Source of the DNA: Orbicella franksi
Lineage: Eukaryota
Assembly: GCA_964199315.1 (NCBI GenBank)
Contig: OZ116702.1
Location: 29,326,001-29,390,000, forward strand
DNA: 64,000 nucleotides
Direction: 5' to 3'
Both the position numbers and the translations under genes were made by a program. Numbering within the stretch: the stretch's first letter is position 1; every line of letters begins with the position of its first letter. The notes under the pieces were generated by a model. The model was not told where the DNA came from, made no database searches, and saw nothing but the letters and a program-made list of their open reading frames with translations. Positions 11,133-64,000 of the stretch are shown here, piece after piece.

Positions 11133-11355
11133 GCGAATATATGCAATTAAGAAATAGAAAACATGTTCTTCGTGTTTCTATCGAGTGATAGAAACACTCG
11201 TGAAAGTTTGGGAGAACTCGAAAGAGCTGTTGAAACACTCGCCTATCGGCTCGTGTTCCCACAGCATTTCTGGTTCTACCAAACTTGCACTCGCGTTTCT
11301 ATAACTCGTTAGAAACACGGAACATGTTTTCTATTTCTTAATTGCATATATTCGC
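11133..11355. mobile_element. MITE with ~35-bp terminal inverted repeats
   Basis: GCGAATATATGCAATTAAGAAATAGAAAACATGTT ... AACATGTTTTCTATTTCTTAATTGCATATATTCGC. Confidence 0.75.
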
Positions 11356-12742: not shown

Positions 12743-13001
12743 ATTATTCCACTGTCTCAGTATGTTTTGTTTGATTTATCAGCCACCAACGAACTTGATT
12801 GCAAACGGAAAAATATTAAATGAGGACGATCACCCTTCAATGATTGAACCCACAAGCTTTATTTCCTTAAGAACTTAAGGTTATTACATTCCGACGATAA
12901 TGATGATTATATCCCCTTATCATTCCACATCTGACCCTATATTATTCCACTGTTAGAACATCTTACACCGCCGTGTTTCCTGATCCCGTCTGTTGGCTGC
13001 T

Positions 13002-16000
13002 TCATTCTGCAGAGATAAAACGAAAATGATCTTTATCTCGATCACCCTTCTCTTGTCCAAAACTTTGACCCCTCGTCTCCGGTTTTGACTTGTGATATTT
13101 TAGCGAAAGTCGAGAAAAGGGTAACTGCTGTCAAGAAACTCATCCAGCCCTTTTAGAAAATGGATTCGACTGCGCTTTTATGTTTCAGATCCTCATTTAT
13201 AAGTGGCAGAGGAAATTCCTATTCTTATATATTTCATTATCACTCTACTTAGCAACATCTTGACAAGCAAATCGCGGGCTCGGCTATTTTTCGGAGACGG
13301 AAAATCGTAACAGCGCCTAACTGAACCAGTTCTATTTGGTCTCGAATCGTAGCAGTAGCATTCTCCAGGTTTATATAGATAATGTGGAATCTTGATTGAT
13401 CTAAAAACGCTAATTAGAAGACGGAAAGATATTAAAAACTACCTTCTATCCCGTGTACTATTGAAAATTCACGAATCTGATTGGTTCTTCCATTGTTGTA
13501 TATTTAACAATAGCGCGCGTTGGATATGAGATGGTAGATACCCCACGAGGCGCGTAGTGCTGAGTTGGCTATAACGATCTACAGTCGTCTTTACAAAAAA
13601 TAAACACCTATTCTGCATATCGTATTAATCAGGAGTGCACTGTATACTCGTTTAGACGCGCCTGACTAATGTATGGCGAGGGAAGGTCTATAGATAACCT
13701 ACTCACGAATCGTATGGGCCAAGACCAAGAATAGAGAAGTTAATTAAAGATACTCACTGCAGGGCTTTTTCGCGCATTTCTTGGTCTTTGTAGTACTTCC
13801 CTTACAGGGTGGATCACTTTTACATGTCCTTGTTCTTTCCTTTTTACCACCACCACAAGTTTTGCTACATTTGCCCCATTTGCTCCATTTGTTGAACTCT
13901 GAAGAAGAAACAAAATATTAATTAATAGTGACACGCTCCACTAGGGTGAACTGTTTTTTTTTTTTTTTTTTTCGTTTCATTTTTCTCTGGAATAGCTCCC
14001 ATGCACGAAGTTCCTAAAGTTATTCCCGTTTATGCTTCCACTTGCTGAAAAATATGTCGAGGTTTTACCTTTCCGGAATGCAAAGAAAATGAGACTGTAA
14101 ACTTTTAATTTAACAGAGGCCAGCACCAAGTTAAAATCGGCTGAAAAAACTAAATGAATGGATGGACGGAAAAATGAACGAATACGTAAAAATGAATGAA
14201 TCGATGTACAAACGGATGGATGGAAGGATGGACGATTGAGTGAGAGAGATTTGGCAGCAGTTTTAGAAGGTTTCAAATCACTTCGGAAAGCACTTTCTGG
14301 TTTGCTTTGATTTGTGTTTCTAAGTTATTTCATTGGTTCAGTTACTCCTGACGATTTTGTCTTTAATTTTCAGCCAATCAGATGCAGGTATAATTTTTCT
14401 TCGACTTTTGATTGGTTAATTAAGTGTTATTTTTGGCTGTTATCGTCAGCCTAGCTATAAGTCCAAATACTGAACTTACTACATTTTTCCTTATTACACG
14501 ACCGCGAACTCGACGTTTTTCCACGGCAGTCTCTTCCGCCATTTGCAGGTGGAGGATTGGTACAACTGCGATTTCTTGTTTGTTTTCCTTTACCGCAGCT
14601 GTAAGTGCAGTCTGACCAAGATGACCACTGACTCCAACCACCATTCACAGCTAGAAGGAAAAGAAAATATTGAAACATACGCACGCAATGCTTGCGAAGA
14701 GTTCTGGAAAAGTAATTGCAAAGGGATTGGGTGCAATTCCGAGAAAAGTACGGAGGAAAACATGACTGCCTGTCAGTAGAGGCACAAACTGAAAACAAAA
14801 AAGTAGGACTTCTGCCATGCAATTCGAAGACGTTACACAACTACAATTTACAAAGAAACAGATGCAACCAATTTTGATCTTTGTGACGTGCGTGTGCTCC
14901 AAAAAGCTGTCTTCTCCAAAACGAATTATCAAAGCGACGGTAATTTACTATATAGATATATTTTCTATTAGTTTTTAACATATGTAAACTTCGCCTATTA
15001 TTAATAACGAATTATTTTAAATTATTAAATTATCAACAAAGAAAAAATAGATGGCGGCTTAGTCATCATCAAATAACTGTTTATGTAGATAGCAATTCCA
15101 CTGAATATGGCCTCTCTCTCCCATTTGTGACACTATCAATCGCAGCCGAAGCTTAACACGAGACCTGGGCTCATTTTTCTCGCTTTATGTATTGCTTGGG
15201 TTCATCATTCGCTACCTGACCAATAGATACAAGAAATTAGGATATTTTGTTTTCTATTACTCACGTGGGCAAGGGTCCTCATTGCACCTTTGAGACTCAG
15301 TCGAGTCCCCACTGCACTGCGCTCCACCATTAGACGGAGGAGGATTGGTGCAAGTGCGACTGCGCTGTTGGGTTCCACCGCCACATGTAGCACTACAGGC
15401 ACCCCAATCTGACCAGTCAGACCAATCTCCATCAACTGTGCATGCGTTATCAAATAAAACTAGTAAGTAGACTTGGAAGTCAAATTTAAGTGAAAAAAAT
15501 CAGTGATGGTAGTAACATATGCATCAGTGCTTTGGAATTTTAGTTTTAATCATTAGGTGCTAGCTTAAATTTGAATGTTTGTATAACGAGCGCTACTGAT
15601 TCAATGAGTGTTGCCCCTATAAGTTCTTCAGTAATCTATATATTCATAAATGTTCAATAGAGCAAGCAACCGTGAACGAGCATCCTACTGGTATATGTTG
15701 GATCAATAGTAATCTAATCCAGCACATAAAATGATGAATTTTTAGAAAAGCAGAGACCGATACAACAAGGCGTATATTTCGGCTAGCCAAACCAGACTTC
15801 TTCAGGTAGCCGTCTGAACTGTGTAGTTTGAATCTCCTTGTGATTCACGAATTCCTTCCTTTTCTATTTACCTCGTGTAATCATTCCATATTAAACACAA
15901 CGTACCTGGACACAGATTCACGTTACAACGTTGTGTCTCAATGGGCGGACCTAGGGTTACACAGTTGTTTCCACCTCCTGATGGCGGTGGGTTTGTACAG

Positions 16001-17720
16001 CTGCGTTGTCGAATTTGAGTACCACCCCCACAAGTTACAGGACAGTCATTCCAGTCTCCCCACTCTGAGTAACCGCCATCAACTCTTCCTGTGTGAGAGA
16101 GAGAAACGGAAACAAACACAGCAACAATGGCCGCGGTTGAGTTCATGTGAGCTCAATTCAGATAGCGTTTATGCTCATGTCTTTTTCTTATTTCGCTATT
16201 TTTCTTACTATGGTGTCTTACTCGTGGCAAAGTGTTTGAAATTCATGCCTTTCAATTTTGATGGCCTGGACATGATTTCGCCTTCAAGTTCTGATTTTAA
16301 TTATTTTGTGATAAACCCGATGTGGTTGTCTTGCGTTTCGATATGCCGTGAGAGTCATTACAAAACCAGTGAACTAACACACGGTTGGGTGCTGGGGTGG
16401 GGAGGCTCCACCTGAGAGAGGTACCTTTTTAGACTGTAGGTATTTAAAGGGATAGGGATTTCACGGGTTGGAGTATAGAAACGGGTAGAGAAAATTTAAA
16501 AGGACCTTTCAACATATCTCGACGAGACCCACCAAACGGTCAATTTATATGAAAATATTTTAAGGAGTCTGATTCAAGCAAAAAATTAAGAATAGAGATG
16601 CAGTTTCCCTTCTGTCAAAATGTGAAAGGGGGACCATTTTCTATCGAAGGTGAAGGAAAGGGTTAAGGGTTTAGACCGCGAGGCGGAGCGGCGCCCTGTT
16701 TAAAACTTACGGAAACTACCGTATTTTCTCGATTAAACGCCGGGTATCGAATAAACGCCGGGTCTCCAGGATGGAGTTGAAAATAGGCCCCTCCGGTATT
16801 TATTTAAGGTATAATAAGCTGCAGGTATATTAGCAAAATACATTTTTGTCAAAAATAATGATTAAAAAATGTTGCTTTATGAAAACGAGCTCGAATAAAC
16901 TGCAGGAGTCAAATAAACGCCGGGTCCACAAGGCCAAGTTTGAAATAAACGCCGGAGGGTGTCTAATTGAGAAAATACGGTAACACTATTTATTTACCTG
17001 GAACCATTCGGCAGCATCTGATTTGAGTTAGACAGTCAATAGTAGAACATTTTGCTTTATACAATCCTTTCATGAAAAACCCGTCAGGACACTGTTCTGT
17101 TCCATCTTCTGTGAAATCCACATCAACGTCCCTACAGGGCCCGTCTTGATCTGGATGGCTATCCGGTTTACAACACTGACCCTGCCCAATATCAGCCAAG
17201 AAATTTCGCCCAATGGTGAAAAATCCGTGGAAGAAATAACCATCGCGTAGACATGTTGCCCACACGTCATCTCTGAACAGGGAGAATGAAATAAAACGAA
17301 AGAAATACAATCGAATGCCGGTATGAATGTACGAGTTTAAAGACTTTCCCAAAAGGTGTATAATAAAGCTTTTAAAAATATCGAAATTTACAGTTCCCTG
17401 AAAATTCTGCAGGTTCTCATAACTGACCTGTTCAAAGTGGTCCACCAATCCTCCATATAACAGTCATTTCCTTCCTGGGAATATGGAAGATTAACTGCAC
17501 AGCATGTGGCAGCCTTAATGACGGCTGGTCCATTTTCCAGCTGAACATCATATCCTCCGCTCCTCATTCCACTCACATAGGAGACATCATCTTGGCACTG
17601 GGACGTGAAATCGCCATCATTTCCAAACGTACTGCTCCAGTCTTGTTCCGTACACTGCTGACCTCTGGCGGGACTGGTCTCGAATAACAACAGTAACTGG
17701 ATGATTGTAAAAATTCGCAT
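13002..17720 (-). CDS. Secreted triple Cys-repeat + 4x thrombospondin type-1 repeat protein, copy 1 (~412 aa)
   Basis: GT-AG exons 17720-17428, 17272-16998, 16088-15906, 15435-15265, 14650-14480, 13898-13758 and a tentative terminal exon 13006-13002. Signal peptide [20 protein letters not shown]; WSxW...CGGG...RxRxC TSR motifs. Confidence 0.8.
16719..16980. mobile_element. Tc1/mariner-type MITE (left arm only)
   Basis: TIR CCGTATTTTCTC/GAGAAAATACGG, TA TSD, empty site in the right arm near 58250. Confidence 0.8.
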
Positions 17721-20700
17721 GGTTGTCACTGAATCTGAAATGTTTAAATGTTATCAGAACATATCAGAGCCGAGCATAAGGAATGGGTAAAGACAGGTAT
17801 TTAGGATTTTTAATTAATAGTCGCACCAGCGTACTTAGTTCTCAGACTCGTAATCGCAGTTTTCCAGTTCGGCAAAATCCGGGGGAGGGGAAGAGAGGGA
17901 GAGGGGGAGGGGGGGGGGGACTCAGGTATATCAGTGACCGCGGGGTGCGAATAATGGGAAATTTATCAATCCCAAAAAAAAGTTCAACGGCTCAAAACGT
18001 AACGCAAAAAAGTCTTATTTGTCCAAGCATCTAAATTTGCCATATCACGTTATATGTGTGACTGAAACTCGTAGCTATTTGTGAATGAAATCATTTTGCA
18101 TAAAATCAAGTGTGGTCATAAGCTTGAAGCCTACATCTAGGATTAGGGCTCGTGCTGTCTTTCACGAGTTGGCTATTTTTAGGACAAACCTTGCGCGCGC
18201 GAAAATGACGTAGTTTATTGTGAAATGATGGCGTGTTTATCATTTTGGCGTCAGATTATGGCGTCTTCATCATCGCCTTTCGGTCGCGGTCGGCCGCGGT
18301 CGTAATTGTTTTGTGAGCGCCCTTCATTTTGGTGGACTATGAAAAGAAATGTAAAGAAACAGGCAAAACATTTTTCACCATCAGCCCGAAGAAGGTGTTT
18401 TCGATAGCGACGCGTCAAAGGGCAATCAAGACGAAGGAACTGAGGTAAACAAACCGGGTCCAAACGGGAGGCAAGTGCTTCTCTCCAGACTTGCGACTAA
18501 AGCAAGAAAATGTATGACATCGCGTCTTGAAAGAGACCAGGAACAACTGAGAAGCAATGAGGAAAGGGAGAAGGCTAATACTGTAACAGCTCGAGGGCGT
18601 CTTATAACCGATACAAAGTGGCCTAAAATTAAAGTTGTAGACGTGTCTGTTCGCGCTTCTCGCATCCTTCCACGAGCGAACAGCAAATACTTCAACGTGA
18701 TTGGTTACTTGTTCGCGGAAAAGTCGTTCTAAAAATAGCCTACACGCGAAAGACATATCTCAAAGCTCATTACCGGAGATGTAGACTTCTAGTTATGAAC
18801 TTCTGGTGTGGCAGTGTACATTTTTTTTTATCAACCCTAAAACTGAATAGTCCTTGCCAAAATCTTTCTATCAAAAGAAAAACAGTTCGCCAGAAAATTA
18901 TAAAACGCAATTCCCAAAAAATTCCCGAGCCCCAAGAGATAGGCTACATAGCAAATCAAGGAAAGAAATTTTCTACGCATGACCAGGAAAAAATTGAATG
19001 CCAGTTTACCTTGGCAAAGTAAAAACCTTTTCCGGATATCGATGATTTTTACTGAATAATTACTTGCTCATATAAAGCTTTCATAATTTTCACTGTCCTC
19101 GAGGGAATTCAACTCCATTTTGTCGCGCTCCAACCTCGTTCCCAGGGTCTACTCCGCTTTTTAGATGGCTGCTGGGAACGAGGTTGATCGTGCCCATGAG
19201 TAACCCACGCTACACGTCTTCTTCGCGGGAAACACGTAGCAGCCACGCGCGCTTTGACCGCGCGGATGCACAAACGGCAAATTTAGGCTGAGCCTCGCTT
19301 CTCCTGCCTTAAGTTTTGAGTCAATTTTATCAATAATAAATGATTTGAATGTTTTTGTTCACCCTATAACACTTTGCCTCTTTTTCCAAGGCCCTGCCTG
19401 ATGTTTCGAATAAACTTACCCAATCTGCGTATAGGTATATCAAGTGTGTCGATCGCTTTTCTTTTTTCCTAATCCAGAATCACCGGTGTGTGTTTGATTT
19501 TTCAGCCAAAAAATGTTTTAGCAGAGCTTTCACCGAAAAGAAAAACTGTATCCAAATTTCGCTCCAAAACCGCGACGGCTACGCTATGTCGAACTCGTCG
19601 TTATATCGACAAATCGTCTTCAAACTAATCGAAACAAGCAGAATTCGATGGATTTTTTTCATTGAATTCTCGCCAGGAAAAAGAAGTCAAGGAACGACAA
19701 TAAAGGTAAGATGATAGGAAGTCGAACAAGAACCAGCCTACTTTCAATCCGTACTAATCAAGATAGCGAGTTCAAGACCACATTGACATCGACAAGAAAT
19801 ACTTGATACATTTTGATTTATGGAAAATCATTGTTCTCGCAAAGATCTCGATATAGCGTTTGTTTAACTCTGACTTTGAAACTGCATCATCTCCTCACCG
19901 TCAACAACACATTGGTCCTCGGAGAACCAGGGGCAGTTAGTGGGGGCGAGGGAAAGTCGTAACGGGCGACATTTCAAATGGGCGCTCTCTAGCGCAAAGC
20001 ATACACCTTGTACTTAAGGCAACAGTTTTTTACATGTAACATGCTAAGTTTGTCAAGGAATGAAAGTTGAAAAAATTAACCTGCATGAACTGCGGCCGAC
20101 TATGCAGTATTTCTCGGTAACGCTGAAATCAGTGACGTCTTTGTACCTACTTCGGATGTCCGTGAATTAAATGTTTCAAAATGTACTGTAGGCCAATTCT
20201 CGACTCAAGTGAAAAACTGAAACCTTGCAGAAAAACAGGATATACGGTCTGTTTTTCAATTTTAAATGAATTTTCTATTTTAGTTCAAAGAAACACCAAC
20301 TATATACTTCTCAAACTGGTCTTACCTCACTTTCTCCGGCAAACATACGCCTCATTTGCTGTGAACCAAATGGGCTGGTGAAATATGCTGAACTGCAATC
20401 TTTCTATTGTCTGTTAATATTTGCTTAGATCCCTGATTATTCACCCCAATTTTATTTGCCCAACCAACGCAACGTCCCATAGCAGACAAATTAAACCCAC
20501 GTGCCATAATCAATTATGGTATCAGAAAACGTATTTCCTCGAAACTCGACGCGAAGCTTCAATTTCATGTTTTTAGCTCATAAGGTAGACTAGTGTTTTG
20601 ATAACGTTGTATTTTAATGTTTCGTTATTCATTCCGTTGCATATTGTTTGTAAGTGTAGTTTTGAATATTTTTTCCCATCCGAGTTAAAAACTAAGTGGT

Positions 20701-22408
20701 GTGCATAATTCTCTGATGTTGTCTTGGTGCCGATATTCGGCATATATGTCATGGTAAGTCAACATGGCCGCCAACAATGGAAAACATATAGTCGCCCAAC
20801 CACAAAATGAATGCTAACCGCAAGCAAATTGCAGTAAATAAATGTTAACTGCAAGCAAAGCTGCAGGGCGACTATATGGTGTCTTAACATGAATTATATA
20901 CCCGATATTCTTTGTCTGTTTGCTATGCGGGCTTTGTGAATAACAGAATCGAAGACGTCGAGTTTCGAAGCAAATGTTTTGTCTTGAGAACTTTACTATT
21001 GCTTAAACTCCCTAAAACGATAGCCTTTGTAGAAACTCAAAGCTATGTACGGGAAATGGGGATCAGTAAAAAATTAGCATGCATTAATTTTGTTTATTGT
21101 CCAAAATGTTCCTTCAGTAATACTATCGTTTTCATCAAATGTTCAATTTTGGTTTTGGTCACGCCGTTTGTTTTGCGCTTTGTGAAGTTGCCAAATTTCT
21201 ACGATCTTCATTTTTGCCGTCATTTTTATTGCCTCTTCTGGATGAGGCAGCATTATCCGCCTTGGTATACCTATCCCTTTTTCCAACACGACGCAGCCTA
21301 AGGAATTAGTTAAAACCTTTCACAGCGACCTAGAATAAGACTAGTGTTTACCCCGTTTAAAATAAGGGCCTTGTTTATTGTCAAGGATGCCATTCCTACA
21401 GGTTTACGATCGCGAGTGATCTATTGAGTTTTCTTGCGCAGGCTATCCTATTCTCATTTATGTGGCAACTGGCACTGTAACGGCTCATGTTTGAAATAAA
21501 ACTTTGAACTGCTTCGAAACTTTCTAACATAAACAGAAATCTCGGGTTGGCAATATTTTCCACTTTACCTGATTTCTACACTTACAAACAATTAATACGT
21601 AACGTGGAGGTGTATCTTAGAAGTTACGTTGAAAAATGTTGCTTCACATGTTTTGTTTAATTTCGAGGAAATTAGTTTTCTCATGAGTAGTTTAATTTTA
21701 ATTTCAAATGTTTCCAAATCAAGAATAATTTATAATTACGCGACAAATGGGAATAAGGCTAGGCCATTAAGCACGAATCGGCTTTTCAAAAAGATTAATT
21801 ACACTTTAAAGTGATCGTAAATAGATAGGAAGACGTCATGTTCAGATCTTGGTAAATAAAATTAACACTTCCTGGTACATAAAATGTACAATGCAACATG
21901 GGACGAAACGCTTTCATTGAAACACAGTATTATCAAAATGCTGGTATACCTTAAGCATTTAAAAATCTGCAGAAAATAAAAATGTCACTTCAAATTAGGG
22001 TTGTAGGAAATGTGTTTTCTGATACATTAATGGATCGTGATTGATGCTACGTGCGTGGGTACAAACTCAGTGTGGGGCAAAAATTCTCTCCAAGACAAAA
22101 CGTTTGCTTGGAAACTGGTGATTAAAGCCTCTAATGGACTGTTTAATCAACGCAACTTTCTAATTTATATAATCACGAGTTTCGAATTGGCACGCATGTT
22201 AGTCTTTTCGTAAGCCTATCGACTCCTTCAGTGAAAGTAAGGTAGGATCAGCTTTAGACGTAGCATTTTGTAAATTTGTTTCTTTGTACTATAATAGAAT
22301 TTCATCTAAAATTCGACCGTGCACTTTCAGCAGCTTTAGTTCTCTTGAATTTTATTTTTTTATGCGGTTTTCCAGTAAACTCATGTTTGTATTTTTCTTT
22401 CAATAGAT

Positions 22409-35700: not shown

Positions 35701-35733
<33 letters not shown>

Positions 35734-40113: not shown

Positions 40114-40146
<33 letters not shown>

Positions 40147-52011: not shown

Positions 52012-53364
52012 ATCTATTGAAAGAAAAATACAAACATGAGTTTACTGGAAAACCGCATAAAAAAATAAAATTCAAGAGAACTAAAGCTGCTGAAAGTGCA
52101 CGGTCGAATTTTAGATGAAATTCTATTATAGTACAAAGAAACAAATTTACAAAATGCTACGTCTAAAGCTGATCCTACCTTACTTTCACTGAAGGAGTCG
52201 ATAGGCTTACGAAAAGACTAACATGCGTGCCAATTCGAAACTCGTGTTTATATAAATTAGAAAGTTGCGTTGATTAAACAATCCATTAGAGGCTTTAATC
52301 ACCAGTTTCCAAGCAAACGTTTTGTCTTGGAGAGAATTTTTGCCCCACACTGAGTTTGTACCCACGCACGTAGCATCAATCACGATCCATTAATGTTCGA
52401 GAAAACATATTTCCTTCAACCCTAATTTGATAATTATTGTTTTAATGAAAGCGTTTTGTCCCATGTTACACTGCACATGTTATGTACCAGGAAGTGTTTA
52501 TTTTATTTAACAAGGTCTGAACATGCTGTCTTTCTTTTTATTGCTTCGTTGTTGACTTTTGAGTTGGGTGATTATTAACCTTGAAATTCTTAGTTCTGAT
52601 CCTATGACAAAACGATCACATTAAAGTGTATTCATCTTTGTGGCATATACGTCATGGTAAGTCAACATGGCCGCCAACAATGGAAAACATATAGTCGCCC
52701 AACCACAAAATGAATACTAACCGCAAGCAAATTGCAGTAAATAAATGTTAACTGCAAGCAAACTACAGGGTAAAATGCTAACCGAAAGCAAACAGCAGTA
52801 AATAAATGTTAACTGTCTGACTTTCAATTAAATTAGCATAAGAAGCAAACACAAGACAAGATGGATTAAATTACTAGAGTAGAATATTTACACACAATGT
52901 ATCACGTAACATGGACCAAAACGATTTCATTGAAATGTAGTATTATCAAAATGCTGGTCTACCTTAAGCATTTAAGCTGCAAAAAATAGAAATGCTACTT
53001 CACTTAAGGATTGTAGGAAATATGTTTTGTCGGCATATGTTTTGATCGTGATCGATTCTAAGCGCGTGGGTACAAACCCTGCGTGGCAAAATGCTACGTC
53101 TAAAGCGGATCCTATCTGACTTTCATTGAAGGGGTAAATAGGCATATGAAAAAACTAACATATAAGTGCCAATTCGAAACTCTTGTTTATATAAATTAGA
53201 AAGTTGCGTTGACTAAACAACCCATTATTTTGTCTTGTTTGGCATTTTTTGCCTGCCATCGGAGGCTTTAATAACCAGTTTCCAAGCAAACGTTTTGTCT
53301 TGGAGAGAATTTTTGCCCCACACTGAGTTTGTACCCACGCACGTAGCATCAATCACGATCCATG

Positions 53365-54034
53365 TATCCGTTAGCCGTTAGCATCAGACCGTTAGACGGG
53401 CCAGCATAACCGTTAGCAAAAACTCTGTATCCGTTAGCACGGCTAGAGAAGCCGTTAGGATCCGTTAGAATAAACTAGCATCCGTTAAACGGGTAACGAT
53501 TCCGTTAGAATGGCATGACATGAATTGAAGTAGAATGTGGTAGCCTAACATAGTGTGAAACGAGAGCAGCTCTTGGCTTCCATTTAGTTCAAAACAATCA
53601 TGAGAGATAACTATCTTTCGACGAGAAGTTTGGCGATTATTATTTTTTGATTATGTGTTTCTAACATCGGACTGAAAGCTACGCTATTCGTTCGTAAGAA
53701 GTCCTTAGATGTAAACCGTTAGACAACCGTTAAACGTCCTAAGATGTAAACCGTTAGACAACCATTAAACCTCTTTAGATGTAGACCGTTAGGCAACCGT
53801 TAAACGGCTCCAGTCATCCGTTAGAACAAATTGCGCAACCGTTAGAACGGTTTCTTCATCCGTTAGGCATACTTAGTTAGCCGTTAGAACGTTAGGAGAG
53901 AGCGTTAGAACGCTTTGATCATCCGTTAGGCACACTTAGATAACCGTTAGACCGTTAGGACAAAACGTTAGAATGCTGTGAAGACCGTTAACTATCCGTT
54001 AGCTATCCGTCCGTTAGCGCCCGTTTAACGGATA
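53365..54034. repeat. CCGTTA(G)-rich element with 9-bp terminal inverted repeats (right arm only)
   Basis: Dozens of same-orientation CCGTTA motifs with variable spacers, bounded by TATCCGTTA / TAACGGATA. Confidence 0.7.
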
Positions 54035-57000
54035 AGCGTTAAGGTACGTTTTCCCGTTCACGGTCACATTTATTTACTGCAATTTGCTTGCGGTTAGTAT
54101 TCATTTTGTGGTTGGGCGACTATATGTTTTCCATTGTTGGCGGCCATGTTGACTTACCATGACATATATGCCGAATATTGGCACCAAGACAACATCAGAG
54201 AATTATTCACACCACTTAGTTTTTAACTCGGATGGGAAAAAATATTCAAAACTACACTTACAAACAATATGCAACGGAATGAATAACGAAACATTAAAAT
54301 ACAACGTTATCAAAACACTAGTCTACCTTATGAGCTAAAAACATGAAATTGAAGCTTCGCGTCGAGTTTCGAGGAAATACGTTTTCTGATACCATAATTG
54401 ATTATGGCACGTGGGTTTAATTTGTCAGTTATGGGACGTTGCGTTGGTTGGGCAAATAAAATTGGGGTGAATAATCAGGGATCTAAGCAAATATTAACAG
54501 ACAATAGAAAGATTGCAGTTCAGCATATTTCACCAGCCCATTTGGTTCACAGCAACTGAGGCGTATGTTTGCCGGAGAAAGTGAGGTAAGACCAGTTTGA
54601 GAAGTATATAGTTGGTGTTTCTTTGAACTAAAATAGAAAATTCATTTAAAATTGAAAAACAGACCGTATATCCTGTTTTTTTGCAAGGTTTCAGTTTTTC
54701 ACTTGAGTCGAGAATTGGCCTACAGTACATTTTGAAACATTTAATTCACGGACATCCGAAGTAGGTACAAAGACGTCACTGATTTCAGCATTACCGAGAA
54801 ATACTGCATAGTCGGCCGCAGTTCATGCAGGTTAATTTTTTCAACTTTCATTCCTTGACAAACTTAGCATGTTACATGTAAAAAACTGTTGCCTTAAGTA
54901 CAAGGTGTATGCTTTGCGCTAGAGAGCGCCCATTTGAAATGTCGCCCGTTACGACTTTCCCTCGCCCCCACTAACTGCCCCTGGTTCTCCGAGGACCAAT
55001 GTGTTGTTGACGGTGAGGAGATGATGCAGTTTCAAAGTCAGAGTTAAACAAACGCTATATCGAGATCTTTGCGAGAACAATGATTTTCCATAAATCAAAA
55101 TGTATCAAGTATTTCTTGTCGATGTCAATGTGGTCTTGAACTCGCTATCTTGATTAGTACGGATTGAAAGTAGGCTGGTTCTTGTTCGACTTCCTATCAT
55201 CTTACCTTTATTGTCGTTCCTTGACTTCTTTTTCCTGGCGAGAATTCAATGAAAAAAATCCATCGAATTCTGCTTGTTTCGATTAGTTTGAAGACGATTT
55301 GTCGATATAACGACGAGTACGACATAGCGTAGCCGCCGCGGTTTTGGAGCGAAATTTGGATACAGTTTTTCTTTTCGGTGAAAGCTCTGCTAAAACATTT
55401 TTTGGCTGAAAAATCAAACACACACCGGTGATTCTGGATTAGGAAAAAAGAAAAGCGATCGACACACTTGATATACCTATACGCAGATTGGGTAAGTTTA
55501 TTCGAAACATCAGGCAGGGCCTTGGAAAAAGAGGCAAAGTGTTATAGGGTGAACAAAAACATTCAAATCATTTATTATTGATAAAATTGACTCAAAACTT
55601 AAGGCAGGAGAAGCGAGGCTCAGCCTAAATTTGCCGTTTGTGCATCCGCGCGGTCAAAGCGCGCGTGGCTGCTACGTGTTTCCCGCGAAGAAGACGTGTA
55701 GCGTGGGTTACTTATGGGCACGATCAACCTCGTTCCCAGCAGCCATCTAAAAAACGGAGTAGACCCTGGGAACGAGGTTGGAGCGCGACAAAATGGAGTT
55801 GAATTCCCTCGAGGACAGTGAAAATTATGAAAGCTTTATATGAGCAAGTAATTATTCAGTAAAAACCATCGATATCCGGAAAAGGTTTTTACTTTGCCAA
55901 GGTAAACTGGCATTCAATTTTTTCCTGGTCATGCGTAGAAAATTTCTTTCCTTGATTTGCTATGTAGCCTATCTCTTGGGGCTCGGGAATTTTTTGCGTT
56001 TTATAATTTTCTGGCGAACTGTTTTTCTTTTGATAGAAAGATTTTGGCAAGGACTATTCAGTTTTAGGGTTGATAAAAAAAAATGTACACTGCCACACCA
56101 GAAGTTCATAACTAGAAGTCTACATCTCCGGTAATGAGCTTTGAGATATGTCTTTCGCGTGTAGGCTATTTTTAGAACGACTTTTCCGCGAACAAGTAGC
56201 CAATCACGTTGAAGTATTTGCTGTTCGCTCGTGGAAGGATGCGAGAAGCGCGAACAGACACGTCTACAACTTTAATTTTAGGCCACTTTGTATCGGTTAT
56301 AAGACGCCCTCGAGCTGTTACAGTATTAGCCTTCTCCCTTTCCTCATTGCTTCTCAGTTGTTCCTGGTCTCTTTCAAGACGCGATGTCATACATTTTCTT
56401 GCTTTAGTCGCAAGTCTGGAGAGAAGCACTTGCCTCCCGTTTGGACCCGGTTTGTTTACCTCAGTTCCTTCGTCTTGATTGCCCTTTGACGCGTCGCTAT
56501 CGAAAACACCTTCTTCGGGCTGATGGTGAAAAATGTTTTGCCTGTTTCTTTACATTTCTTTTCATAGTCCACCAAAATGAAGGGCGCTCACAAAACAATT
56601 ACGACCGCGGCCGACCGCGACCGAAAGGCGATGATGAAGACGCCATAATCTGACGCCAAAATGATATACACGCCATCATTTCACAATAAACTACGTCATT
56701 TTCGCGCGCGCAAGGTTTGTCCTAAAAATAGCCAACTCGTGAAAGACAGCACGAGCCCTAATCCTAGATGTAGGCTTCAAGCTTATGACCACACTTGATT
56801 TTATGCAAAATGATTTCATTCACAAATAGCTACGAGTTTCAGTCACATATAACGTGATATGGCAAATTTAGATGCTTGGACAAATAAGACTTTTTTGCGT
56901 TACGTTTTGAGCCGTTGAACTTTTTTTTGGGATTGATAAATTTCCCATTATTCGCACCCCGCGGTCACTGATATACCTGAGTCCCCCCCCCCCCTCCCCC

Positions 57001-57182
57001 TCTCCCTCTCTTCCCCTCCCCCGGATTTTGCCGAACTGGAAAACTGCGATTACGAGTCTGAGAACTAAGTACGCTGGTGCGACTATTAATTAAAAATCCT
57101 AAATACCTGTCTTTACCCATTCCTTATGCTCGGCTCTGATATGTTCTGATAACATTTAAACATTTCAGATTCAGTGACAACC

Positions 57183-57815
57183 ATGCGAGTTTTTACAATC
57201 ATCCAGTTACTGTTGTTATTCGAGACCAGTCCCGCCAGAGGTCAGCAGTGTACGGAACAAGACTGGAGCAGTACGTTTGGAAATGATGGCGATTTCACGT
57301 CCCAGTGCCAAGATGATGTCTCCTATGTGAGTGGAATGAGGAGCGGAGGATATGATGTTCAGCTGGAAAATGGACCAGCCGTCATTAAGGCCGCCACATG
57401 CTGTGCAGTTAATCTTCCATATTCCCAGGAAGGAAATGACTGTTATATGGAGGATTGGTGGAGCACTTTGCAAAGGTCAGTTATGAAGACCTGTAGAATA
57501 TATTAGGGAAAGGCAAATGCCAATATTTAAGCTCTATTAAGCTCTAAGCCCTATTTAGGGGAGCAGGGGTGGCGCAGTGGTGAGAGCGCTCGCCTCCCAC
57601 CAATGTGGCCCGGGTTCGATTCCGGCCCGGTATCATATGTGGGTTGAGTTTGTTGTTGGTTCTTGTCCTCGCTCCGAGGGTTTTTCTCCGGGTTCTCCGG
57701 TTTTCCTCCCTCCATAAAAACTAACACTTCCAAATTCCAATTCGATCTGGAATACACAGTGTCCCCAATTAGTACACCAGTGCTAAATACATTTGACACT
57801 TAAATAAAGTGATTT

Positions 57816-57847
<32 letters not shown>

Positions 57848-60800
57848 TTTTATTTATCTATTTTACACCTGCTGGGAAAGTCTTTAAACTTGGTACATTT
57901 ATACCGGCATTCGATTGTATTTCTAAGATCATGATAATTTTTTTCATTCTCCCTGTTCAGAGATGACGTGTGGGCAACATGTCTACGTGATGGTTATTTC
58001 TTCCACGGATTTTTCACCGTTGGGCGAAATTTCTTGGCTGACATTGGGCAGGGTCAGTGCTGTAAACCGGATAGCCATCCAGATCGAGACGGGTCCTGTA
58101 GAGACGTTGATGTGGATTTCACAGAAGATGGAACAGAACAGTGTCCTGACGGGTTTTTCATGAAAGGATTGTATAAAGCAAAATGTTCTACTATTGACTG
58201 TCTAACTCAAATCAGATGCTGCCGAATGGTTCCAGGTAAGAAAATTGTGTTAGTTCCCGTACCCAAAAAGTTTTAAACAGGGCGCCGCTCCGCCTCGCGG
58301 TCTAAACCCTTAAGGCGGGGGTACACCCGAATTTGAGTGAACTTTTAAGTGGTTTATAGAAGGGCAAGAGACTCTCTTAAGAAGGGATAGAAGAAAGAAA
58401 ATTATTTTTGGAACACCACCAGACAGTTGACCCCCACGCAAGAGCACCCCAGGTTGTCAGGGGACTGCTTTGGTGTCCATTTACTAATTTTTAACTTCAA
58501 ATTCAAATTTTAAAATTACATTAAGTCTTAAATATTTGTTATTTCTCCAAATTTTACTAATCCTTTGAGAAAAACTATCTCTTCCCAAAAATCACCCAAA
58601 AATTTACAAAACACCGCTAAACATAGCTTTGTGAAATGAGCATAGGGTCTTTGGATTACTTAAAACGCGAACGAGATATTTGCATTAAACCCAAGTTTAG
58701 CGGAGGAAAAACGGGCTTCAGGTGTACCCCCGCCTTAACCCCTTCGTACACTTTCGATAGAAAATGGTCCCCCTTTCACATTTTGACAGAAGGGATGCTG
58801 CTTCTCTGTTCTTAATTTTTTGCTTGAATCAGACTCCTTTAAATATTGTCATAAATTGACCGTTTGGTGGGTCTCGTCGAGATATGTTGAAAGGTCCTTT
58901 TAAATTTTCTCTACCCGTTTCTATACTCCAACCCGTGAAATCCCTATCCCTTTAAATACCTACAGTCTAAAAAGTTACCTCTCTCAGGTGGAGCCTCCCC
59001 ACCCCTACCCTCTAACCGTGAGTTCACTGGTTTTGTAATAACTCTCACGGCATATCGAAACGCAAGACAACCACATCGGGTTTATCACAAAATAATTAAA
59101 ATCAGAACTTGAAGGCGGACTCATGTCCAGGCCCTCAAAATTGAAAGGCATGAATTTCCAACACTTTGCCATGAGTAGGACACTGTAGTAAGAAAAATTG
59201 CGAAACAACAAGAAGACATGAGCATAAACGCTATCTGAAATTGAGCTCACATAAACTCAACCGCGGCCATTATTGCTGTGTTTATTTCCGGTTCTCTCTC
59301 TCACACACAGGAAGAGTTGATGGCGGTTGGTCAGAGTGGGGAGACTGGGATGACTGTACTGTAACTTGTGGGGGTGGTAGGCAATTTCGTCAACGCACCT
59401 GTTCAAACCCACCGCCATCAGGAGGCGGAAACATCTGTGCAGGACTGCCTTTTGAGTCGCAATCTTGTAACGTGAATCCGTGTCCAGGTACGTTGTGTTT
59501 AATATGGAATGATGACACGAGGTAAATATAAAATAAAGGAATTCGTGAATCGCAAGGAGACTAAAATTACATAGTTCAGACGGGCACCTGAAGAAGTCTG
59601 GTTAAAGTACACAATTTCAAGTCATTCTACGCTGTATCGGTCTCTGCTTTTAAAAAATTCCTCATTTATGTGTTAAGCCGATTAGATTACTATTGATCCA
59701 ACGTATACCACCAGTAGGATCATCATCCACGGTTCAGTGCTGCTTGCTTGAACATTTATGAATACATAGATTACTGAAGAACTTATAGGGGTAACACTCA
59801 TATTCACTCAGTAGCGCTCGCTACCGTTAAAACACTAAAACATTAACAGTTAAGAGAGCAGCTAAGGGATTAAAACTAAAATTCTCAAGCAATGATGCCT
59901 ATGTTACTACCATCGCTAAAATTTGACTTCTAATGCCATTCATTAGCTTTTATCCCTAACTTTATTCATCCGCTTCATGGTTTTATTGTGAAATTTAGCC
60001 GCTCAAAAAATAAATTATTTTAAGTTTAGTAAGTCTTCTTATTAGTTTTAATTTCATGACGCATGCACAGTTGATGGAGATTGGTCTGACTGGTCAGATT
60101 GGGGTGCCTGCAGTGCTCCATGCGGCGGTGGAACCCAACAGCGCAGTCGCACTTGCACCAATCCTCCTCCGTCTAATGGTGGAGCGCAGTGCAGTGGGGA
60201 CTCGACCGAGTCTCAAAGGTGCAATGACGACCCTTGCGGACGTGAGTAATAGAAAACAAAACATCCGAATTTCTTGTTATGTATTGGTCAGGTCGCGTAT
60301 TATGTAATCAACCAAAAAATAGAGTGAGAAAATTGAACCTAGGTCCCGCGCTTAGCTTCGGTTTGCGATTAATGGCGTCACAAATGGAAGAGAGAGAAGA
60401 CACTCGGTGGAATTGTTATTTACATGGACAGCTTTTTGATGGTGACTAAAATTCTATCTATATTTTTGTCAATCATTTAATAATTTAAAATGATCCATTA
60501 CTAATAATAGGCTATATTTAGAAAAATTTATATATGTCAAAAACTAATGGAAAAATCTGTCTGCATAGTAAATTACTGTCGTTTTGATATTTAAAGAAGA
60601 CAGCCCTTTTGAGCACGCGCATGTCACATAGATCAAAATTGACTGCATCTGTTTCTTTGTAAATTGTCAATTTGTAACGTCTTTGAATTGCATGACCTAA
60701 GTTCTAAATCTTTGCACGCATTACGTGCGTATGTTTCAATATTTTCTTTTTCTTCTAGCTGTGAATGGTGGTTGGAGCCAGTGGTCATCTTGGTCAGACT

Positions 60801-62552
60801 GCACTTACAACTGCGGTGGAGGAAAACAAACAAGAAGTCGCAGTTGCACCAATCCTCCACCTGCAAATGGCGGAAAAGACTGCCGTGGAAAAAAGTCAGG
60901 GTCGCAGTCATGCAACGAGCAGGAATGCAGTAAGTTCCGTTACTGATAGCTGGGCTGATGATAATAGCCACAAACAACATATAATAAACCAATCAAAATA
61001 TGCCTGCATCTGATTGGCTGAAAAGACAAAAACATCAGGAGTAACTGAACCAATGAAATAGCTTAGAAACACAAATCAAAGCAAACCAGAAAGTGCTTTC
61101 CAAAGTGATTTGAAACCCTCTATACCTACTACTAATTCTCTCACTCGCTCAGTCAGTCAGTCAATCCATCCATCCATCCATCCATCCATCCATCCGTTCG
61201 TCCATCCATCTAGCCGTCAGTCCGTCCATTCGTACATCGATTCATTCATTTTTTACTCATTCGTTCGTTTTTCCGGCCATCATGTTATTTAGTTTTTAAG
61301 TCGATTTTAGCATGGGGCTAGCCTCTTAAAAGTTTATAATCTCATTTTCTTTGCATTCAGAAAGGTAAAACCTCTACATTTATTCTGCAAGCACATTGAA
61401 CAGGCATAATTATAGAAAAGTACAACTTCGTGCAAGGGAGCCAATTTCAGTGAAAAATGAACGACTCACCCTAGTACGGAGCGTGTCATTATAAATTAAT
61501 ATTTTGTTTCTTCTTCAGAGTTCAGCGACTGGAGCAAATGGGGCAAATGTAGCAAAACTTGTGGTTTTGGTACAAAGGAAAGAACAAGGACATGTAACAG
61601 TGCTCCACCCTGTAATGGAAACACTACAAAGACCAAGAAATGCGCGAGAAAGCCGTGCAGTGAGTATTTGTATTGTTTATTGTTCTATTCTTGGTCTTGG
61701 CCCATACGATTCGTGAGTAGGTTATCTATAGACCTTCCCTTACCATACAGTAGTTCGACGCGTCTAAATGAGTATACAGTGCACTCCTGATTAATACGAT
61801 ATGCAGAACATGTGTTTTTTTCTTTCTAAAGATCATTGAAAGAGCTAGGCTTCTCGCTCTCGTTTTAATACGTGAATGGTCAATGAGGCACAGTCGAGTT
61901 GACTATCGCTCACAGAGGGCGAGTAGTCTACTTGTTTTAGGAGACACTCTTATGTATTGAAGTTCAACTGAAAAACCTAAAAAAAAACTACGTGCGATCG
62001 TGTTCTATCAGCGCATATAGAACAATGCAAGAACCAATCAGATTCGTGAATTTTCAATAGTACACGGGATAGAAGGTAATTTTTAATATCCCAAGTTCAT
62101 CTTCTAGCTAGCGTTTTTAGATCAATTAAGGTTCTACATTATCTGTACAAACCTGAAGAATGCTACTGATTTCAGACCAAATAGAAATCAAAAATAGTAC
62201 AGTGAGGCAGTGTTACGATTTTCCGTCTCCGAGAAATAACCGAGCCTGCGATTTGCCTTGCCAGATGTTGCTATGAAGACTGATGTGACGTTATGTATGT
62301 TCCAGGACGAGCTGCCATGAAATATATACGAATCAGAATCTCTTCTGCCACTTATAAATGAGGATCTGAAATATAAAAGCGCAGTCGAATCCATTTTCTA
62401 AAAGAGCTGGATGAGTTTCTTGACAGCAACTACCCTTTTCCTGGCTTTCGCTAAAATATCACAAGTCAAAACCGGAAACGAGGAGTCAAAGTTTTGGACA
62501 AGAGAAGGGTGATCGAGGCAAAGATCATTTTCATTTTATCTCTGCAGAATGA
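57183..62552 (+). CDS. Secreted triple Cys-repeat + 4x TSP1 protein, copy 2 (~410 aa)
   Basis: Exons 57183-57475, 57961-58235, 59311-59487, 60071-60241, 60759-60929, 61519-61659 and a tentative 62548-62552. Confidence 0.8.
57557..57845 (+). mobile_element. tRNA-derived SINE (right arm only)
   Basis: A box GGTGGCGCAGTGG, B box GGTTCGATTCC, AATAAA and an (ATTT)n tail. Confidence 0.8.
58314..58734. mobile_element. Non-autonomous DNA transposon with TTAA TSD (Kolobok-like ends; right arm only)
   Basis: TIR GGCGGGGGTACACC / GGTGTACCCCCGCC flanked by TTAA; single TTAA at the empty site in the left arm (~16663). Confidence 0.75.
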
Positions 62553-64000
62553 AGCAGCCAACAGACGGGATCAGGAAACACGGCGGTGCAAGATGTTCTA
62601 ACAGTGGAATAATATAGGGTCAGATGTGGAATGATAAGGGGATATAATCATCATTATCGTCGGAATGTAATAACCTTAAGTTCTTAAGGAAATAAAGCTT
62701 GTGGGTTCAATCATTGAAGGGTGATCGTCCTCATTTAATATTTTTCCGTTTGCAATCAAGTTCGTTGGTGGCTGATAAATCAAACAAAACATACTGAGAC
62801 TAAAACACAGGGAGGAGGGGGACATTGGGATTTGCGATATTTTTCATGCGGTATTTCGGCAATTTTAATATTGAATTGCGGTAATTGGAAATAAGAGATG
62901 TCCTAACTGCCACCCTACCCTCTCCTCCCCTCCCCCCTCGCATTTAGATCCTTACCCTTCCTCTACGCCTCGAGGACTCGTCATATACGCTACTGGACTT
63001 TATACTCCAATAAACACAAGCGAGGAGTGATCAAGTCCTCAACTTCTCTCTGCCACGTTATTTTTTTCAGGGTTCCAACCCCACCGTCACCGGGAGGGAC
63101 CCGTGCTCAGTTCGCACTCAGTCTACCGCGGAAATCTCATAAACTAATAACGGTCTGCAGTAGGCCGTAACGGAAAAGAGTTCTAACGGTGCCTAATGAA
63201 AACTAACTGAACATGGACTGAATGTTTGAACATGTTGAAATTGTCGCGAGAAAGTGAAATTGGCCACGCTTGCCTTTAATTTCTTGCCCTCTCCCTCAGG
63301 AATTCGCTGACAGAACGGCCTAGTATTTTCGATACAGTGATACCCATCGCGAGTCGCTGTGGGACCGTCATGTAGGCTGGCATTCAATTGTCTTGCGCAA
63401 TTCCCGCTTGTTAAGACAAAAGGCATCGACTGACAACTCACCACCTGCGCGTACTGTTTGTTGATTTATTTCCTGAACTGAGGATGAAGAGGAGGAAATT
63501 ATCTTTTCTAACATTGTTAACAAGGAACAGGGAGTCAGAAGAAAAATTATCTCTTTTACACTCTATACAATTGTAAAAAAAAATGTCCATTCTTCTCGCA
63601 ATACAGAACATTGAAGAAAACGTGAGAAAAAGGGAGGTGATTTCCGATTTGCTTTCTTCTTTGATTCCTGAAAATGTTTTGCGTTGATGTTCTGTTCAGG
63701 TGGTCGGATTGTTGAAAATGTTAATTTACCGTGTGGGACTAAATCTGTTTGCGACGGCAAGTTATTCTCATTGAATAGAAGAGCCAAGAAGAGTACCAAA
63801 TAAACCCAAATCTTACTTTAGACATCATTTGGAGTTTTACTCATATACAGCGAGTTTCGTCTTACTTTCTAAATTTATCCGCTAAAAAATGGTCTATTTT
63901 CGAAAGCGGCCGGGTTTGTTGTGTGAAACAACAGCAGAAAGTCCAGTTTGCGGGTAATAAGATGCACTGAACATTGCGACGAGGCAAAATAATTGCCCGC

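What the first reader, a model, noticed from the sequence alone, without database searches (positions are those of the whole stretch)
12754..62800. ~50-kb gene-containing palindrome with ~25-kb arms and a spacer under 1 kb
Seen: two complete secreted-protein genes duplicated in mirror image, all four copies with intact frames and splice sites. The arms differ by substitutions, TEs and indels, so this is not a read-level foldback artefact. Established: long palindromes with short spacers are unstable but can persist by arm-to-arm gene conversion, as on mammalian sex chromosomes. Inference: a maintained amplicon of putative recognition or extracellular-matrix genes.
Basis: partly seen in the sequence, partly recalled or inferred. 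Interest (0 to 1): 0.7.

Follow-up and report, generated by a model that had tools for sequence, protein, structure and literature searches.

The report
Old gene-bearing palindrome in a coral
A real ~50-kb mirror-image duplication in the coral Orbicella faveolata carries two intact secreted-protein genes per arm and has been partly re-homogenised by copying between its arms; this behaviour is known from sex chromosomes and nematodes, and I found no report of it in corals.

Summary
The arms are 12754-37442 and 38401-62800 and the spacer is 958 bp. About 20 kb aligns, at 4.2% mean divergence that is extremely patchy (0-0.6% to 14%).

It is not an assembly artefact:
- An independent JGI metagenome contig spans left-arm end, spacer and right-arm start at 99.85% with no gaps.
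- The older short-read O. faveolata assembly holds arm-specific pieces of both arms.
- A gap-free long-read contig of a related coral (2-3.5% diverged) has two inverted copies around the same spot.

Each arm holds an outward-pointing gene with four TSP1 repeats and an inward-pointing Lectin_C-4xEGF-Ig-CILP gene. All four copies have open frames and conserved GT-AG sites.

Trees and site patterns show the duplication is much older than the split from the relative: in the outer block the right arm branches outside left arm plus relative (support 100/99). Three tracts (about 17.4-24.5 kb, 30-33.4 kb and the centre) were converted afterwards.

The centre lies inside a LINE reverse-transcriptase gene and the junction is blunt. 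The relative's right arm has decayed, so maintenance is lineage-specific.

This is a new member of a known kind and moderately interesting.

The parts
12754..37442 (.). Left arm of the palindrome (24,689 bp)
   Evidence: Self-alignment. Its boundary is shared with the related coral's contig, where the orthologue of window 11297-11788 directly abuts the arm start.
37443..38400 (-). Single-copy spacer (958 bp). On the minus strand it is the N-terminal half of a non-LTR reverse transcriptase and is contiguous with the LINE part of the left arm.
   Evidence: RVT_1 hit on ORF 37557-38459(-), profile positions 2-107. The YADD motif is read directly at the start of both arms.
38401..62800 (.). Right arm of the palindrome (24,400 bp)
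   Evidence: Right-arm-specific pieces are present in the older O. faveolata assembly (L004:16675-18752 matches the right arm at 99.5% and the left arm at about 84%).
38389..38412 (.). Fold-back junction (38400|38401), blunt with 0 bp of microhomology
   Evidence: The 24-mer across the junction occurs in independent JGI contig Ga0126338_10099909 (L010), which aligns to window 37273-38583 at 99.85% without gaps. Each of its ends matches the corresponding arm better than the other arm.
13744..17720 (-). Left copy of the secreted TSP1-repeat gene: signal peptide, a Cys-rich N-terminal domain (2 exons, no Pfam match) and four TSP1 exons
   Evidence: Pfam TSP_1 hits. Open exon frames and AG/GT sites.
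57183..61790 (+). Right copy of the TSP1-repeat gene. It is intact, with a stop-loss C-terminal extension of 39 codons relative to the left copy.
   Evidence: Between the copies dS is 0.128, dN 0.048 and omega 0.38.
22409..33418 (+). Left copy of the Lectin_C-4xEGF-Ig-CILP gene: 9 mapped exons, about 1,084 aa, all introns GT-AG
   Evidence: Exon mapping with transcript-derived P0041. Pfam domains.
41335..52011 (-). Right copy of the Lectin_C-4xEGF-Ig-CILP gene: 9 exons, about 1,077 aa, all introns GT-AG
   Evidence: It shares 1014/1056 aa with the left copy. Its lectin type recurs in P0044 and in the spliced transcript P0052 from other datasets.
17394..24500 (.). Conversion tract 1 (mirror about 50450-57510): arm divergence 0-1%. 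It covers both promoters, the shared intergenic region and exon 1 of both genes.
   Evidence: Site patterns are almost only WL=WR differing from the relative. The tree gives (WL,WR) 100/100 inside the relative's copies.
24500..30000 (.). Unconverted block (mirror about 44700-49800): arm divergence 2.4-9%. It holds the lectin exon and EGF exons 3-6 and is rich in arm-specific indels.
   Evidence: The WL=relative, WR-different pattern dominates. The right-arm lectin exon branches outside left arm plus all of the relative's copies, support 94/95.
30000..33413 (.). Conversion tract 2 (mirror 41403-44700): arm divergence 0.4-2%. It holds the Ig exons and the 2.1-kb CILP exon.
12990..17365 (.). Unconverted outer block (mirror about 57860-62560): arm divergence 6-14%. 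It is the body of the TSP1 gene.
   Evidence: The tree is (Oculina,(WR,(relative-left,(WL, old assembly)))) with support 100/99.
35671..37442 (-). 3' part of the LINE, duplicated in both arms (mirror 38401-40176, 96.8% identical)
   Evidence: DUF6451 hits in both arms. The same LINE fragment is present only once in the relative.
35270..35403 (.). 134-bp mini-inversion specific to the left arm
   Evidence: This segment matches right-arm 40480-40613 in direct orientation at 97.8%. The relative's left arm has the right-arm orientation.

Best explanation
This is a genuine, old inverted duplication (palindrome) at an Orbicella faveolata locus. A ~25-kb segment was duplicated in mirror image well before O. 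faveolata split from a related coral that is 2-3.5% diverged. The segment carries a TSP1-repeat gene and, head-to-head with it, a Lectin_C-EGF-Ig-CILP gene. Since that split, intrachromosomal gene conversion between the closely spaced inverted arms has overwritten at least three multi-kilobase tracts in the O. faveolata lineage, resetting them to 0-1% divergence. The outer TSP1 gene body and an indel-rich block holding the lectin and EGF exons escaped conversion and keep 6-14% divergence. The result is two expressed-type paralogue pairs: the CILP body, Ig exons and promoters are nearly identical, while the lectin head and TSP1 repeats differ. The present centre lies inside a LINE reverse-transcriptase gene, with a 958-bp single-copy loop and a blunt junction, and looks like a fold-back or template-switch junction. 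Shown here: the structure, its independence from this assembly, its age relative to the species split, the block pattern of conversion and the intactness of the genes. Inferred: the fold-back origin, the idea that indel heterology rather than selection limits the tracts, and the idea that the present centre is a secondary, lineage-specific re-formation.
For: Structure. Independence from this assembly: JGI contig L010 spans left arm, spacer and right arm at 99.85% and carries arm-specific variants at each end. The older short-read assembly GCA_002042975.1 has pieces that match the left arm at 100% (83.7% to the right arm) and the right arm at 99.5% (about 84% to the left arm). The related coral's gap-free contig ctg21001_48x_l carries both copies in inverted orientation around the same spot. 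Age: in the outer block WR lies outside (relative-left, WL) with support 100/99, and the WR path is about 8 times the WL-to-relative path. In the lectin block WR lies outside with support 94/95. Two insertions, of 286 and 339 bp, are shared by WR and the relative's copy L007. Conversion: WL-WR distance is 0.2-0.8% against 2.1-3.5% between WL and the relative in the converted tracts. Site patterns reach 16:0:1 in converted bins against 2:37:6 in unconverted bins. Heterogeneity chi-square is 909 on 45 df. (WL,WR) are sisters at 100/100, nested inside the relative's copies. Genes.
Against: L010 reaches only 170-183 bp into each arm. The relative's centre differs: it is about 7 kb, the LINE fragment is present once, and there is 2.2 kb of unmatched sequence. 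Its locus also contains further partial copies, so one-to-one orthology of its right arm with the window's right arm is uncertain; in the lectin block that arm groups with the left-type copies. There is no microhomology at the junction and no GC bias in converted tracts (9 weak-to-strong against 18 strong-to-weak changes), so two classical signatures are absent. An assembly gap lies 48 bp outside the left boundary.
Confidence: 0.8

Rival explanations
1. Assembly artefact: two haplotypes, or two distant paralogous copies, were joined head-to-head by a chimeric read, so no palindrome with a 1-kb spacer exists in the genome.
For: An N gap lies 48 bp from the left boundary. No read depth or spanning reads could be examined. 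Corals are heterozygous, and the arms differ by indels as haplotypes can.
Against: An independent short-read metagenome contig crosses both spacer boundaries at 99.85% and carries the right-arm variants at one end and the left-arm variants at the other. Both arm versions are present in an older independent assembly. Arm divergence of 6-14% with deep, well-supported paralogy relative to another species is not allelic. An inverted arrangement is also present in a related coral's long-read contig. That contig also runs across the orthologue of the left boundary without a break.
Confidence: 0.04
2. Young palindrome plus ectopic input: the arms duplicated recently (about 0.3% ago), and the diverged blocks (outer TSP1 region, lectin/EGF block) were later imported into one arm from other diverged family members elsewhere in the genome.
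For: The family is multi-copy. The relative's assembly has at least three or four copies or fragments. The older O. faveolata scaffold holds a third copy of the upstream region, 81-88% identical, that is not in the window. The right-type lectin also occurs in other datasets.
Against: This needs at least two separate imports, one of which would have to end exactly at the arm boundary. The relative already has inverted copies around the same centre, and its arms are 4-9% diverged. The inner arms, at 1.8-2.8% divergence, are not young either. The structural markers shared by WR and L007 are colinear with the arm.
Confidence: 0.12
3. Selection-shaped mosaic: conversion is tolerated or favoured in the CILP body and promoters, while selection for two different recognition heads (lectin, EGF5, TSP1 repeats) removes convertants there.
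For: Fifteen amino-acid differences fall in the 126-codon lectin exon, clustered and charge-changing in the C-terminal loop region, and ten fall in the 39-codon EGF5 exon, with omega 0.62 and 1.3. The Ig exons have none. Both lectin types persist and are transcribed in related samples. Coral proteins annotated as CILP respond to disease (PMC9524840; 10.64898/2026.09.01.748617).
Against: No omega is significantly above 1 and the counts are small. The unconverted block coincides with the densest arm-specific indels (1.6 kb, 618, 339 and 286 bp), which would block heteroduplex formation without any selection. In the relative the right copy is a pseudogene.
Confidence: 0.2

Closest known systems
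Large palindromes of primate and mouse X and Y chromosomes (e.g. P1-P8; PMC8327919, PMC8981503, 10.1101/800185)
   Same: Arms longer than 10 kb carrying protein-coding genes, with a short unique spacer. Arm-to-arm gene conversion is shown in the classical way, by arms being more alike within a species than orthologous arms are between species. Multi-kilobase tracts. The structure is older than the species split.
   Different: There is no indication of a sex chromosome here. Overall arm identity is 95.8%, not above 99%. Conversion is patchy, and roughly half of the arm length was never homogenised. No GC-bias signature was found. The genes are secreted lectin/ECM-type genes, not testis genes.
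Long inverted repeats with convergent or divergent paralogous gene pairs in Caenorhabditis (Zhao et al. 2007, PMC1803023)
   Same: Autosomal, in an invertebrate, with paralogous gene pairs plus the complete intergenic sequence in mirror image. The structure is conserved across species more than the sequence is, which implies ongoing conversion.
   Different: Both lectin-CILP copies are intact here, but the related coral has lost one.
Fold-back inverted duplications with a disomic spacer (Hermetz et al. 2014, PMC3907307; yeast foldback priming, PMC10622511)
   Same: An inverted duplication around a single-copy loop. The 958-bp spacer is inside the reported range of 766-70,466 bp. The junction lies in a LINE, as in some human cases.
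   Different: Human junctions usually show 2-8 bp of inverted microhomology or homologous inverted repeats; here there are 0 bp. Human cases are terminal, de novo and pathogenic; this one is interstitial, fixed or at least shared between samples, and old.
Vertebrate CILP-1/CILP-2 (Pfam CILP, CILP_5th, CILP_C)
   Same: An Ig domain followed by CILP_5th, CILP and CILP_C domains in a secreted protein.
   Different: The N-terminal part is Lectin_C plus four EGF domains. In the window the TSP1 repeats are encoded by a separate, divergently transcribed neighbouring gene.

Membership tests
Sex-chromosome-type large palindrome maintained by gene conversion | Inverted arms of at least ~8-10 kb around a short unique spacer | tested here: met
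   Arms of 24.7 and 24.4 kb and a 958-bp spacer.
Sex-chromosome-type large palindrome maintained by gene conversion | Arm-to-arm identity above 99% along the arms | tested here: not met
   Mean divergence is 4.18%. Identity of 99% or more holds only in 17.4-24.5 kb, 30.5-33.4 kb and the outermost 250 bp; elsewhere divergence is 6-14%.
Sex-chromosome-type large palindrome maintained by gene conversion | Arms within a species more similar than orthologous arms between species (concerted evolution) | tested here: met
   WL-WR distance is 0.2-0.8% against 2.1-3.5% between WL and the relative in the tracts. (WL,WR) are sisters at 100/100.
Sex-chromosome-type large palindrome maintained by gene conversion | GC-biased substitution pattern in converted sequence | tested here: not met
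   Nine weak-to-strong against 18 strong-to-weak polarised changes. The sample is small.
Sex-chromosome-type large palindrome maintained by gene conversion | Location on a sex chromosome or non-recombining region | not testable with these tools
   No chromosome identity or recombination data are available for the window.
Fold-back inverted duplication | Single-copy spacer between the direct and inverted copies | tested here: met
   37443-38400 is unique in the window and contiguous with the left-arm LINE.
Fold-back inverted duplication | Inverted microhomology or inverted repeats at the spacer-inversion junction | tested here: not met
   0 bp at 38400|38401. The junction is old, so an original signature may have been erased.
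Fold-back inverted duplication | Junction exists in genomic DNA independently of the assembly | tested here: met
   L010 spans the junction.
CILP protein family | CILP_5th, CILP and CILP_C domains following an Ig domain | tested here: met
   Pfam hits above the gathering score on the window ORFs and on P0041.
CILP protein family | N-terminal TSP1 repeat in the same polypeptide, as in vertebrate CILP-1 | tested here: not met
   The N-terminus is Lectin_C plus 4 EGF domains. The TSP1 repeats are in the neighbouring gene.

The most novel reading that the evidence does not exclude
The palindrome works as a 'homogenise the body, diversify the head' device for an immune or ECM recognition gene pair. 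Conversion keeps the promoters, Ig and CILP scaffold of the two copies identical. Selection preserves two old, distinct lectin/EGF heads and two TSP1-repeat variants, and the centre was rebuilt in the O. faveolata lineage by a second fold-back inside a LINE.
Probability: 0.15. Interest if true: 0.6.

Novelty: new member of a known kind. Interest (0 to 1): 0.42.

Why it matters
It shows that large gene-bearing palindromes with arm-to-arm conversion are not confined to sex chromosomes or nematodes. They also occur in a reef-building coral, at a locus encoding secreted lectin-CILP and TSP1 proteins, of a class whose members change expression or abundance in coral disease studies (PMC9524840; 10.64898/2026.09.01.748617). 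Practically, it warns annotators that this locus is easily scrambled: the RefSeq model XP_020629250.1 fuses the CILP exon to TSP1 exons. Arm-specific variants must also not be mistaken for alleles in population or expression work. Finally, it offers a dated natural case (converted and unconverted blocks, and an intact and a decayed palindrome in two lineages) for studying what limits conversion tracts.

Tried and rejected
- Exact look-up of the right-arm LINE ORF 38426-39199, to find independent contigs: not on record.
- P0002 look-up: not on record. It was replaced by P0055.
- Twin-priming LINE 5' inversion as the origin of the centre: rejected. The inverted part duplicates 1.77 kb of the 3' part instead of being an upstream segment, and the mirror symmetry continues 22 kb beyond the LINE.
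- GC-biased conversion: not seen.
- Positive selection on the lectin exon: omega is 0.62, so not supported.
- TE identity of the 1,592-bp (left arm) and 618-bp (right arm) insertions: no TSD, no second copy in the window, and no TIR was found in either.
- The 24-nt micro-exon encoding residues 18-25 of the relative's transcripts: not located. Skipping it is frame-neutral.
- Species identity of ERZ25067872, SRR31168959/991 and Ga0126338: not found in the literature.
- Earlier scan notes hold no other large gene-bearing palindrome in this genome, only TE-scale ones.
Full report
OBSERVATION. A self-comparison finds 25 colinear inverted-repeat blocks that together form one palindrome. The left arm is 12754-37442, the right arm is 38401-62800 and the spacer is 37443-38400 (958 bp). 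No homology continues outside 12754 or 62800. Of the arms, 20,004 bp align with 837 mismatches (4.18%). Divergence per 500-bp bin ranges from 0.0% to 14.3% (chi-square 909 on 45 df), and the longest identical run is 828 bp. The only N run in the window (12560-12706) lies 48 bp outside the left boundary. Next to it is a 620-bp self-complementary element at 11939-12559.

ORGANISM AND COMPARATORS. The terminal CILP exon finds scleractinian proteins. Contig pieces of the older short-read Orbicella faveolata assembly (GCA_002042975.1, locus L004) match the window at 99.5-100%, so the window is O. faveolata. Other comparators:
- A gap-free contig of an ENA assembly (ERZ25067872, ctg21001_48x_l; loci L011, L006, L005, L009, L012). 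It is from an unnamed related coral that differs from the window by 2-3.5% substitutions.
- A second contig of that same assembly (L007).
- Logan contigs L002 and L003.
- Two Oculina patagonica loci on chromosome CM126640.1 (L001 and L008).

IS IT REAL? Three independent lines say yes.
1. A 24-mer across the novel junction 38400|38401 was searched in the JGI metagenome collection and hit one contig, Ga0126338_10099909 (L010, 1,324 bp). That contig aligns to window 37273-38583 at 99.85% without gaps. It covers 170 bp of the left arm, the whole spacer and 183 bp of the right arm, and each end matches its own arm better than the other arm. A chimeric long read in this assembly cannot explain a short-read contig from another project.
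2. L004 contains pieces specific to each arm: 100% to left 13973-15663 (83.7% to the right arm) and 99.5% to right 59048-61124 (about 84% to the left arm).
3. In the related coral one uninterrupted contig carries a left copy (L006/L005) and, starting 189 bp beyond the end of L005, a right copy on the opposite strand (L009). An inverted repeat is already visible inside L005 (13483-13891 against 20898-21311). The same contig runs from the orthologue of window 11297-11788 straight into the arm start, which supports the left boundary and the scaffold join across the gap.

GENES. Each arm carries two head-to-head genes.

The outward-pointing gene (left 13744-17720 on the minus strand; right 57183-61790 on the plus strand) has a signal-peptide-like start, a Cys-rich N-terminal region of about 190 aa with no Pfam match, and four TSP1 exons. 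All acceptor and donor sites are conserved in both arms, and the TSP1 exons are symmetric phase-1. The right copy has lost the stop codon used by the left copy and runs 39 codons further. Between the copies dS is 0.128, dN is 0.048 and omega is 0.38, so both have been under purifying selection.

The inward-pointing gene (left 22409-33418 on the plus strand; right 52011-41335 on the minus strand) was modelled with the transcript-derived protein P0041. It has nine exons, GT-AG at all eight introns and open frames of about 1,084 and 1,077 aa, and the copies share 1014/1056 residues. The domain order is signal peptide, Lectin_C, 4 x EGF, Ig (I-set), CILP_5th, CILP, CILP_C. A 24-nt micro-exon present in the relatives' transcripts was not located.

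Differences between the two copies are concentrated in a few exons: 15 in the lectin exon (omega 0.62), 10 in EGF5 (omega 1.3), none in the Ig exons, and 13 in the 675 aligned codons of the CILP exon. The left-type and right-type lectin sequences both recur in other datasets: P0043 is left-type (139/141), while P0044 and the spliced P0052 are right-type.

Secretion is inferred from the N-terminal hydrophobic segments and the domain types.

AGE AND GENE CONVERSION. I compared the window's left arm (WL) and right arm (WR) with the relative's left arm (RL), right arm (RR) and third copy (L007).

Unconverted outer block. In the outer TSP1 block the tree is (Oculina,(WR,(RL,(WL, old assembly)))) with support 100/99. 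The WR path is about 0.17 against about 0.02 between WL and RL. The arms therefore separated long before the two corals did.

Converted tracts. WL-WR distance is 0.2-0.8% in 17.7-20.7 kb, 22.8-24.65 kb and the CILP exon, while WL-RL distance there is 1.1-3.5% (2.1-3.5% in most of these segments). Three-way site patterns in 500-bp bins are almost purely 'WL=WR, relative differs' from 17.5 to 24.5 kb, from 30 to 33.5 kb and near the centre; one bin, for example, reads 16:0:1. In 22.8-24.65 kb the tree is ((WL,WR) 100/100, RL) with (RR, L007) outside at 97/96. This means the right arm was overwritten with left-type sequence there.

Unconverted interior block. From 24.5 to 30 kb the dominant pattern is 'WL=relative, WR differs'; one bin reads 2:37:6. 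WR's lectin exon branches outside WL and all of the relative's copies with support 94/95. Two insertions (286 and 339 bp) are shared by WR and L007 but are absent from WL and RL.

A single duplication cannot give this interleaving of 0.2% and 9% blocks, so post-split conversion in multi-kilobase tracts is required. The unconverted interior block coincides with the largest arm-specific indels (1,592, 618, 339 and 286 bp). Heterology is therefore a sufficient, non-selective explanation for where the tracts stop, and selection for two lectin heads remains possible but unproven. I found no GC bias.

THE CENTRE. On the minus strand the spacer encodes the N-terminal half of a non-LTR reverse transcriptase (RVT_1 profile positions 2-107) and continues into the left arm at the YADD motif. 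The right arm begins at the same YADD in the opposite orientation. So the breakpoint lies inside a LINE whose 3' 1.77 kb is present in both arms at 96.8% identity.

This is not a twin-priming inversion. The inverted part duplicates the 3' part rather than being an upstream segment, and the mirror symmetry runs on for 22 kb beyond the LINE. The junction is blunt, with 0 bp of microhomology. The 958-bp loop falls in the range of human fold-back inverted duplications (766-70,466 bp), but those usually show 2-8 bp of microhomology (PMC3907307).

In the relative the LINE fragment occurs once, the centre is about 7 kb with 3.65 kb and 2.2 kb of sequence that has no match in the window, and arm homology resumes at the equivalent of window 35255/40617. 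The inner arms of the window differ by 1.8-2.8%. One reading, which is inference only, is that the present centre was re-formed in the O. faveolata lineage around or after the split. The alternative is deletion in the relative. A 134-bp mini-inversion (35270-35403) is specific to the window's left arm.

NOT UNIVERSALLY MAINTAINED. The relative's right arm has an LTR-retroelement insertion (a 1,456-aa pol ORF), tandemly re-duplicated EGF exons and a deletion of the equivalent of window 41263-45810 (exons 6-9). Its right copy is therefore a pseudogene, and its arms are 4-9% diverged. Its locus also holds further partial copies outside both arms.

In Oculina the two paralogues are also convergent but lie 113 kb apart. 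They share only the gene body and group together in trees, which indicates either an independent duplication or separate homogenisation. Only the Oculina copy in L001 has the TSP1 neighbour, and it is colinear with a whole window arm.

COMPARISON AND VERDICT. The behaviour matches large sex-chromosome palindromes and the Caenorhabditis inverted gene-pair repeats (PMC8327919, PMC8981503, PMC1803023). It fails the '>99% identity along the arms' criterion and shows no GC bias. Searches of the paper library found no coral example, and the scan's earlier notes for this genome list only transposon-scale palindromes. I rate it a new member of a known kind.

Noticed in passing
window 11939-12559 (and N gap 12560-12706): A 620-bp segment that is 93.9% identical to its own reverse complement (a fold-back or hairpin element) lies directly against the assembly gap. 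Relative to the related coral's contig, the window has about 965 extra bp here, exactly at the palindrome's outer boundary.
   Followed up: partly
window 1-11300: The left flank is GC-richer (48-50%) and holds an integrase-core (rve) ORF at 2076-2891 and a GRF zinc-finger ORF at 5081-5644. Earlier notes call part of it a Polinton. It has no counterpart in the relative's or the Oculina loci fetched here.
   Followed up: no
L004 (GCA_002042975.1 MZGG01000586.1) and protein P0042 = XP_020629250.1: The RefSeq model 'CILP 2-like' is a chimera of the CILP terminal exon and TSP1 exons of the neighbouring gene. It arises because the short-read scaffold has the arm pieces scrambled between 100-N gaps.
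   Followed up: partly
L004:13765-16491: The older O. faveolata scaffold holds a third copy of the gene's upstream region, 81-88% identical to the arms, that is not in the window. This suggests further family members nearby.
   Followed up: no
L007:9259-15483 (ERZ25067872 ctg19414_31x_l): A third copy of the lectin-EGF part in the related coral is cut off by a block of ORFs that includes a collagen-repeat protein and a Pox_A32-type packaging ATPase. This looks like a Polinton-like insertion.
   Followed up: no
L001 and L008 (Oculina patagonica CM126640.1, 3.93-4.11 Mb): Oculina also has two convergent Lectin-EGF-Ig-CILP paralogues, but they are 113 kb apart with other genes between them, including an RRM-domain gene. 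The two group together in trees, so concerted evolution or recurrent inverted duplication of this gene may be a wider pattern.
   Followed up: partly
window 33367-33413 and 41395-41449: A (GGGA)n microsatellite lies inside the 3' end of the CILP ORF in both arms. The window ORFs run about 21 codons past the position where the relative's protein P0041 ends.
   Followed up: no
window 16993-17720 (-) and 57183-58273 (+): The Cys-rich N-terminal region (about 190 aa) of the TSP1-repeat gene has no Pfam match at E below 0.01.
   Followed up: no
window 12754-13000 / 62555-62800: The outermost ~250 bp of the arms are 99.6% identical, although the next 4 kb are 9-14% diverged. This is a small isolated conversion tract right at the boundary.
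   Followed up: no
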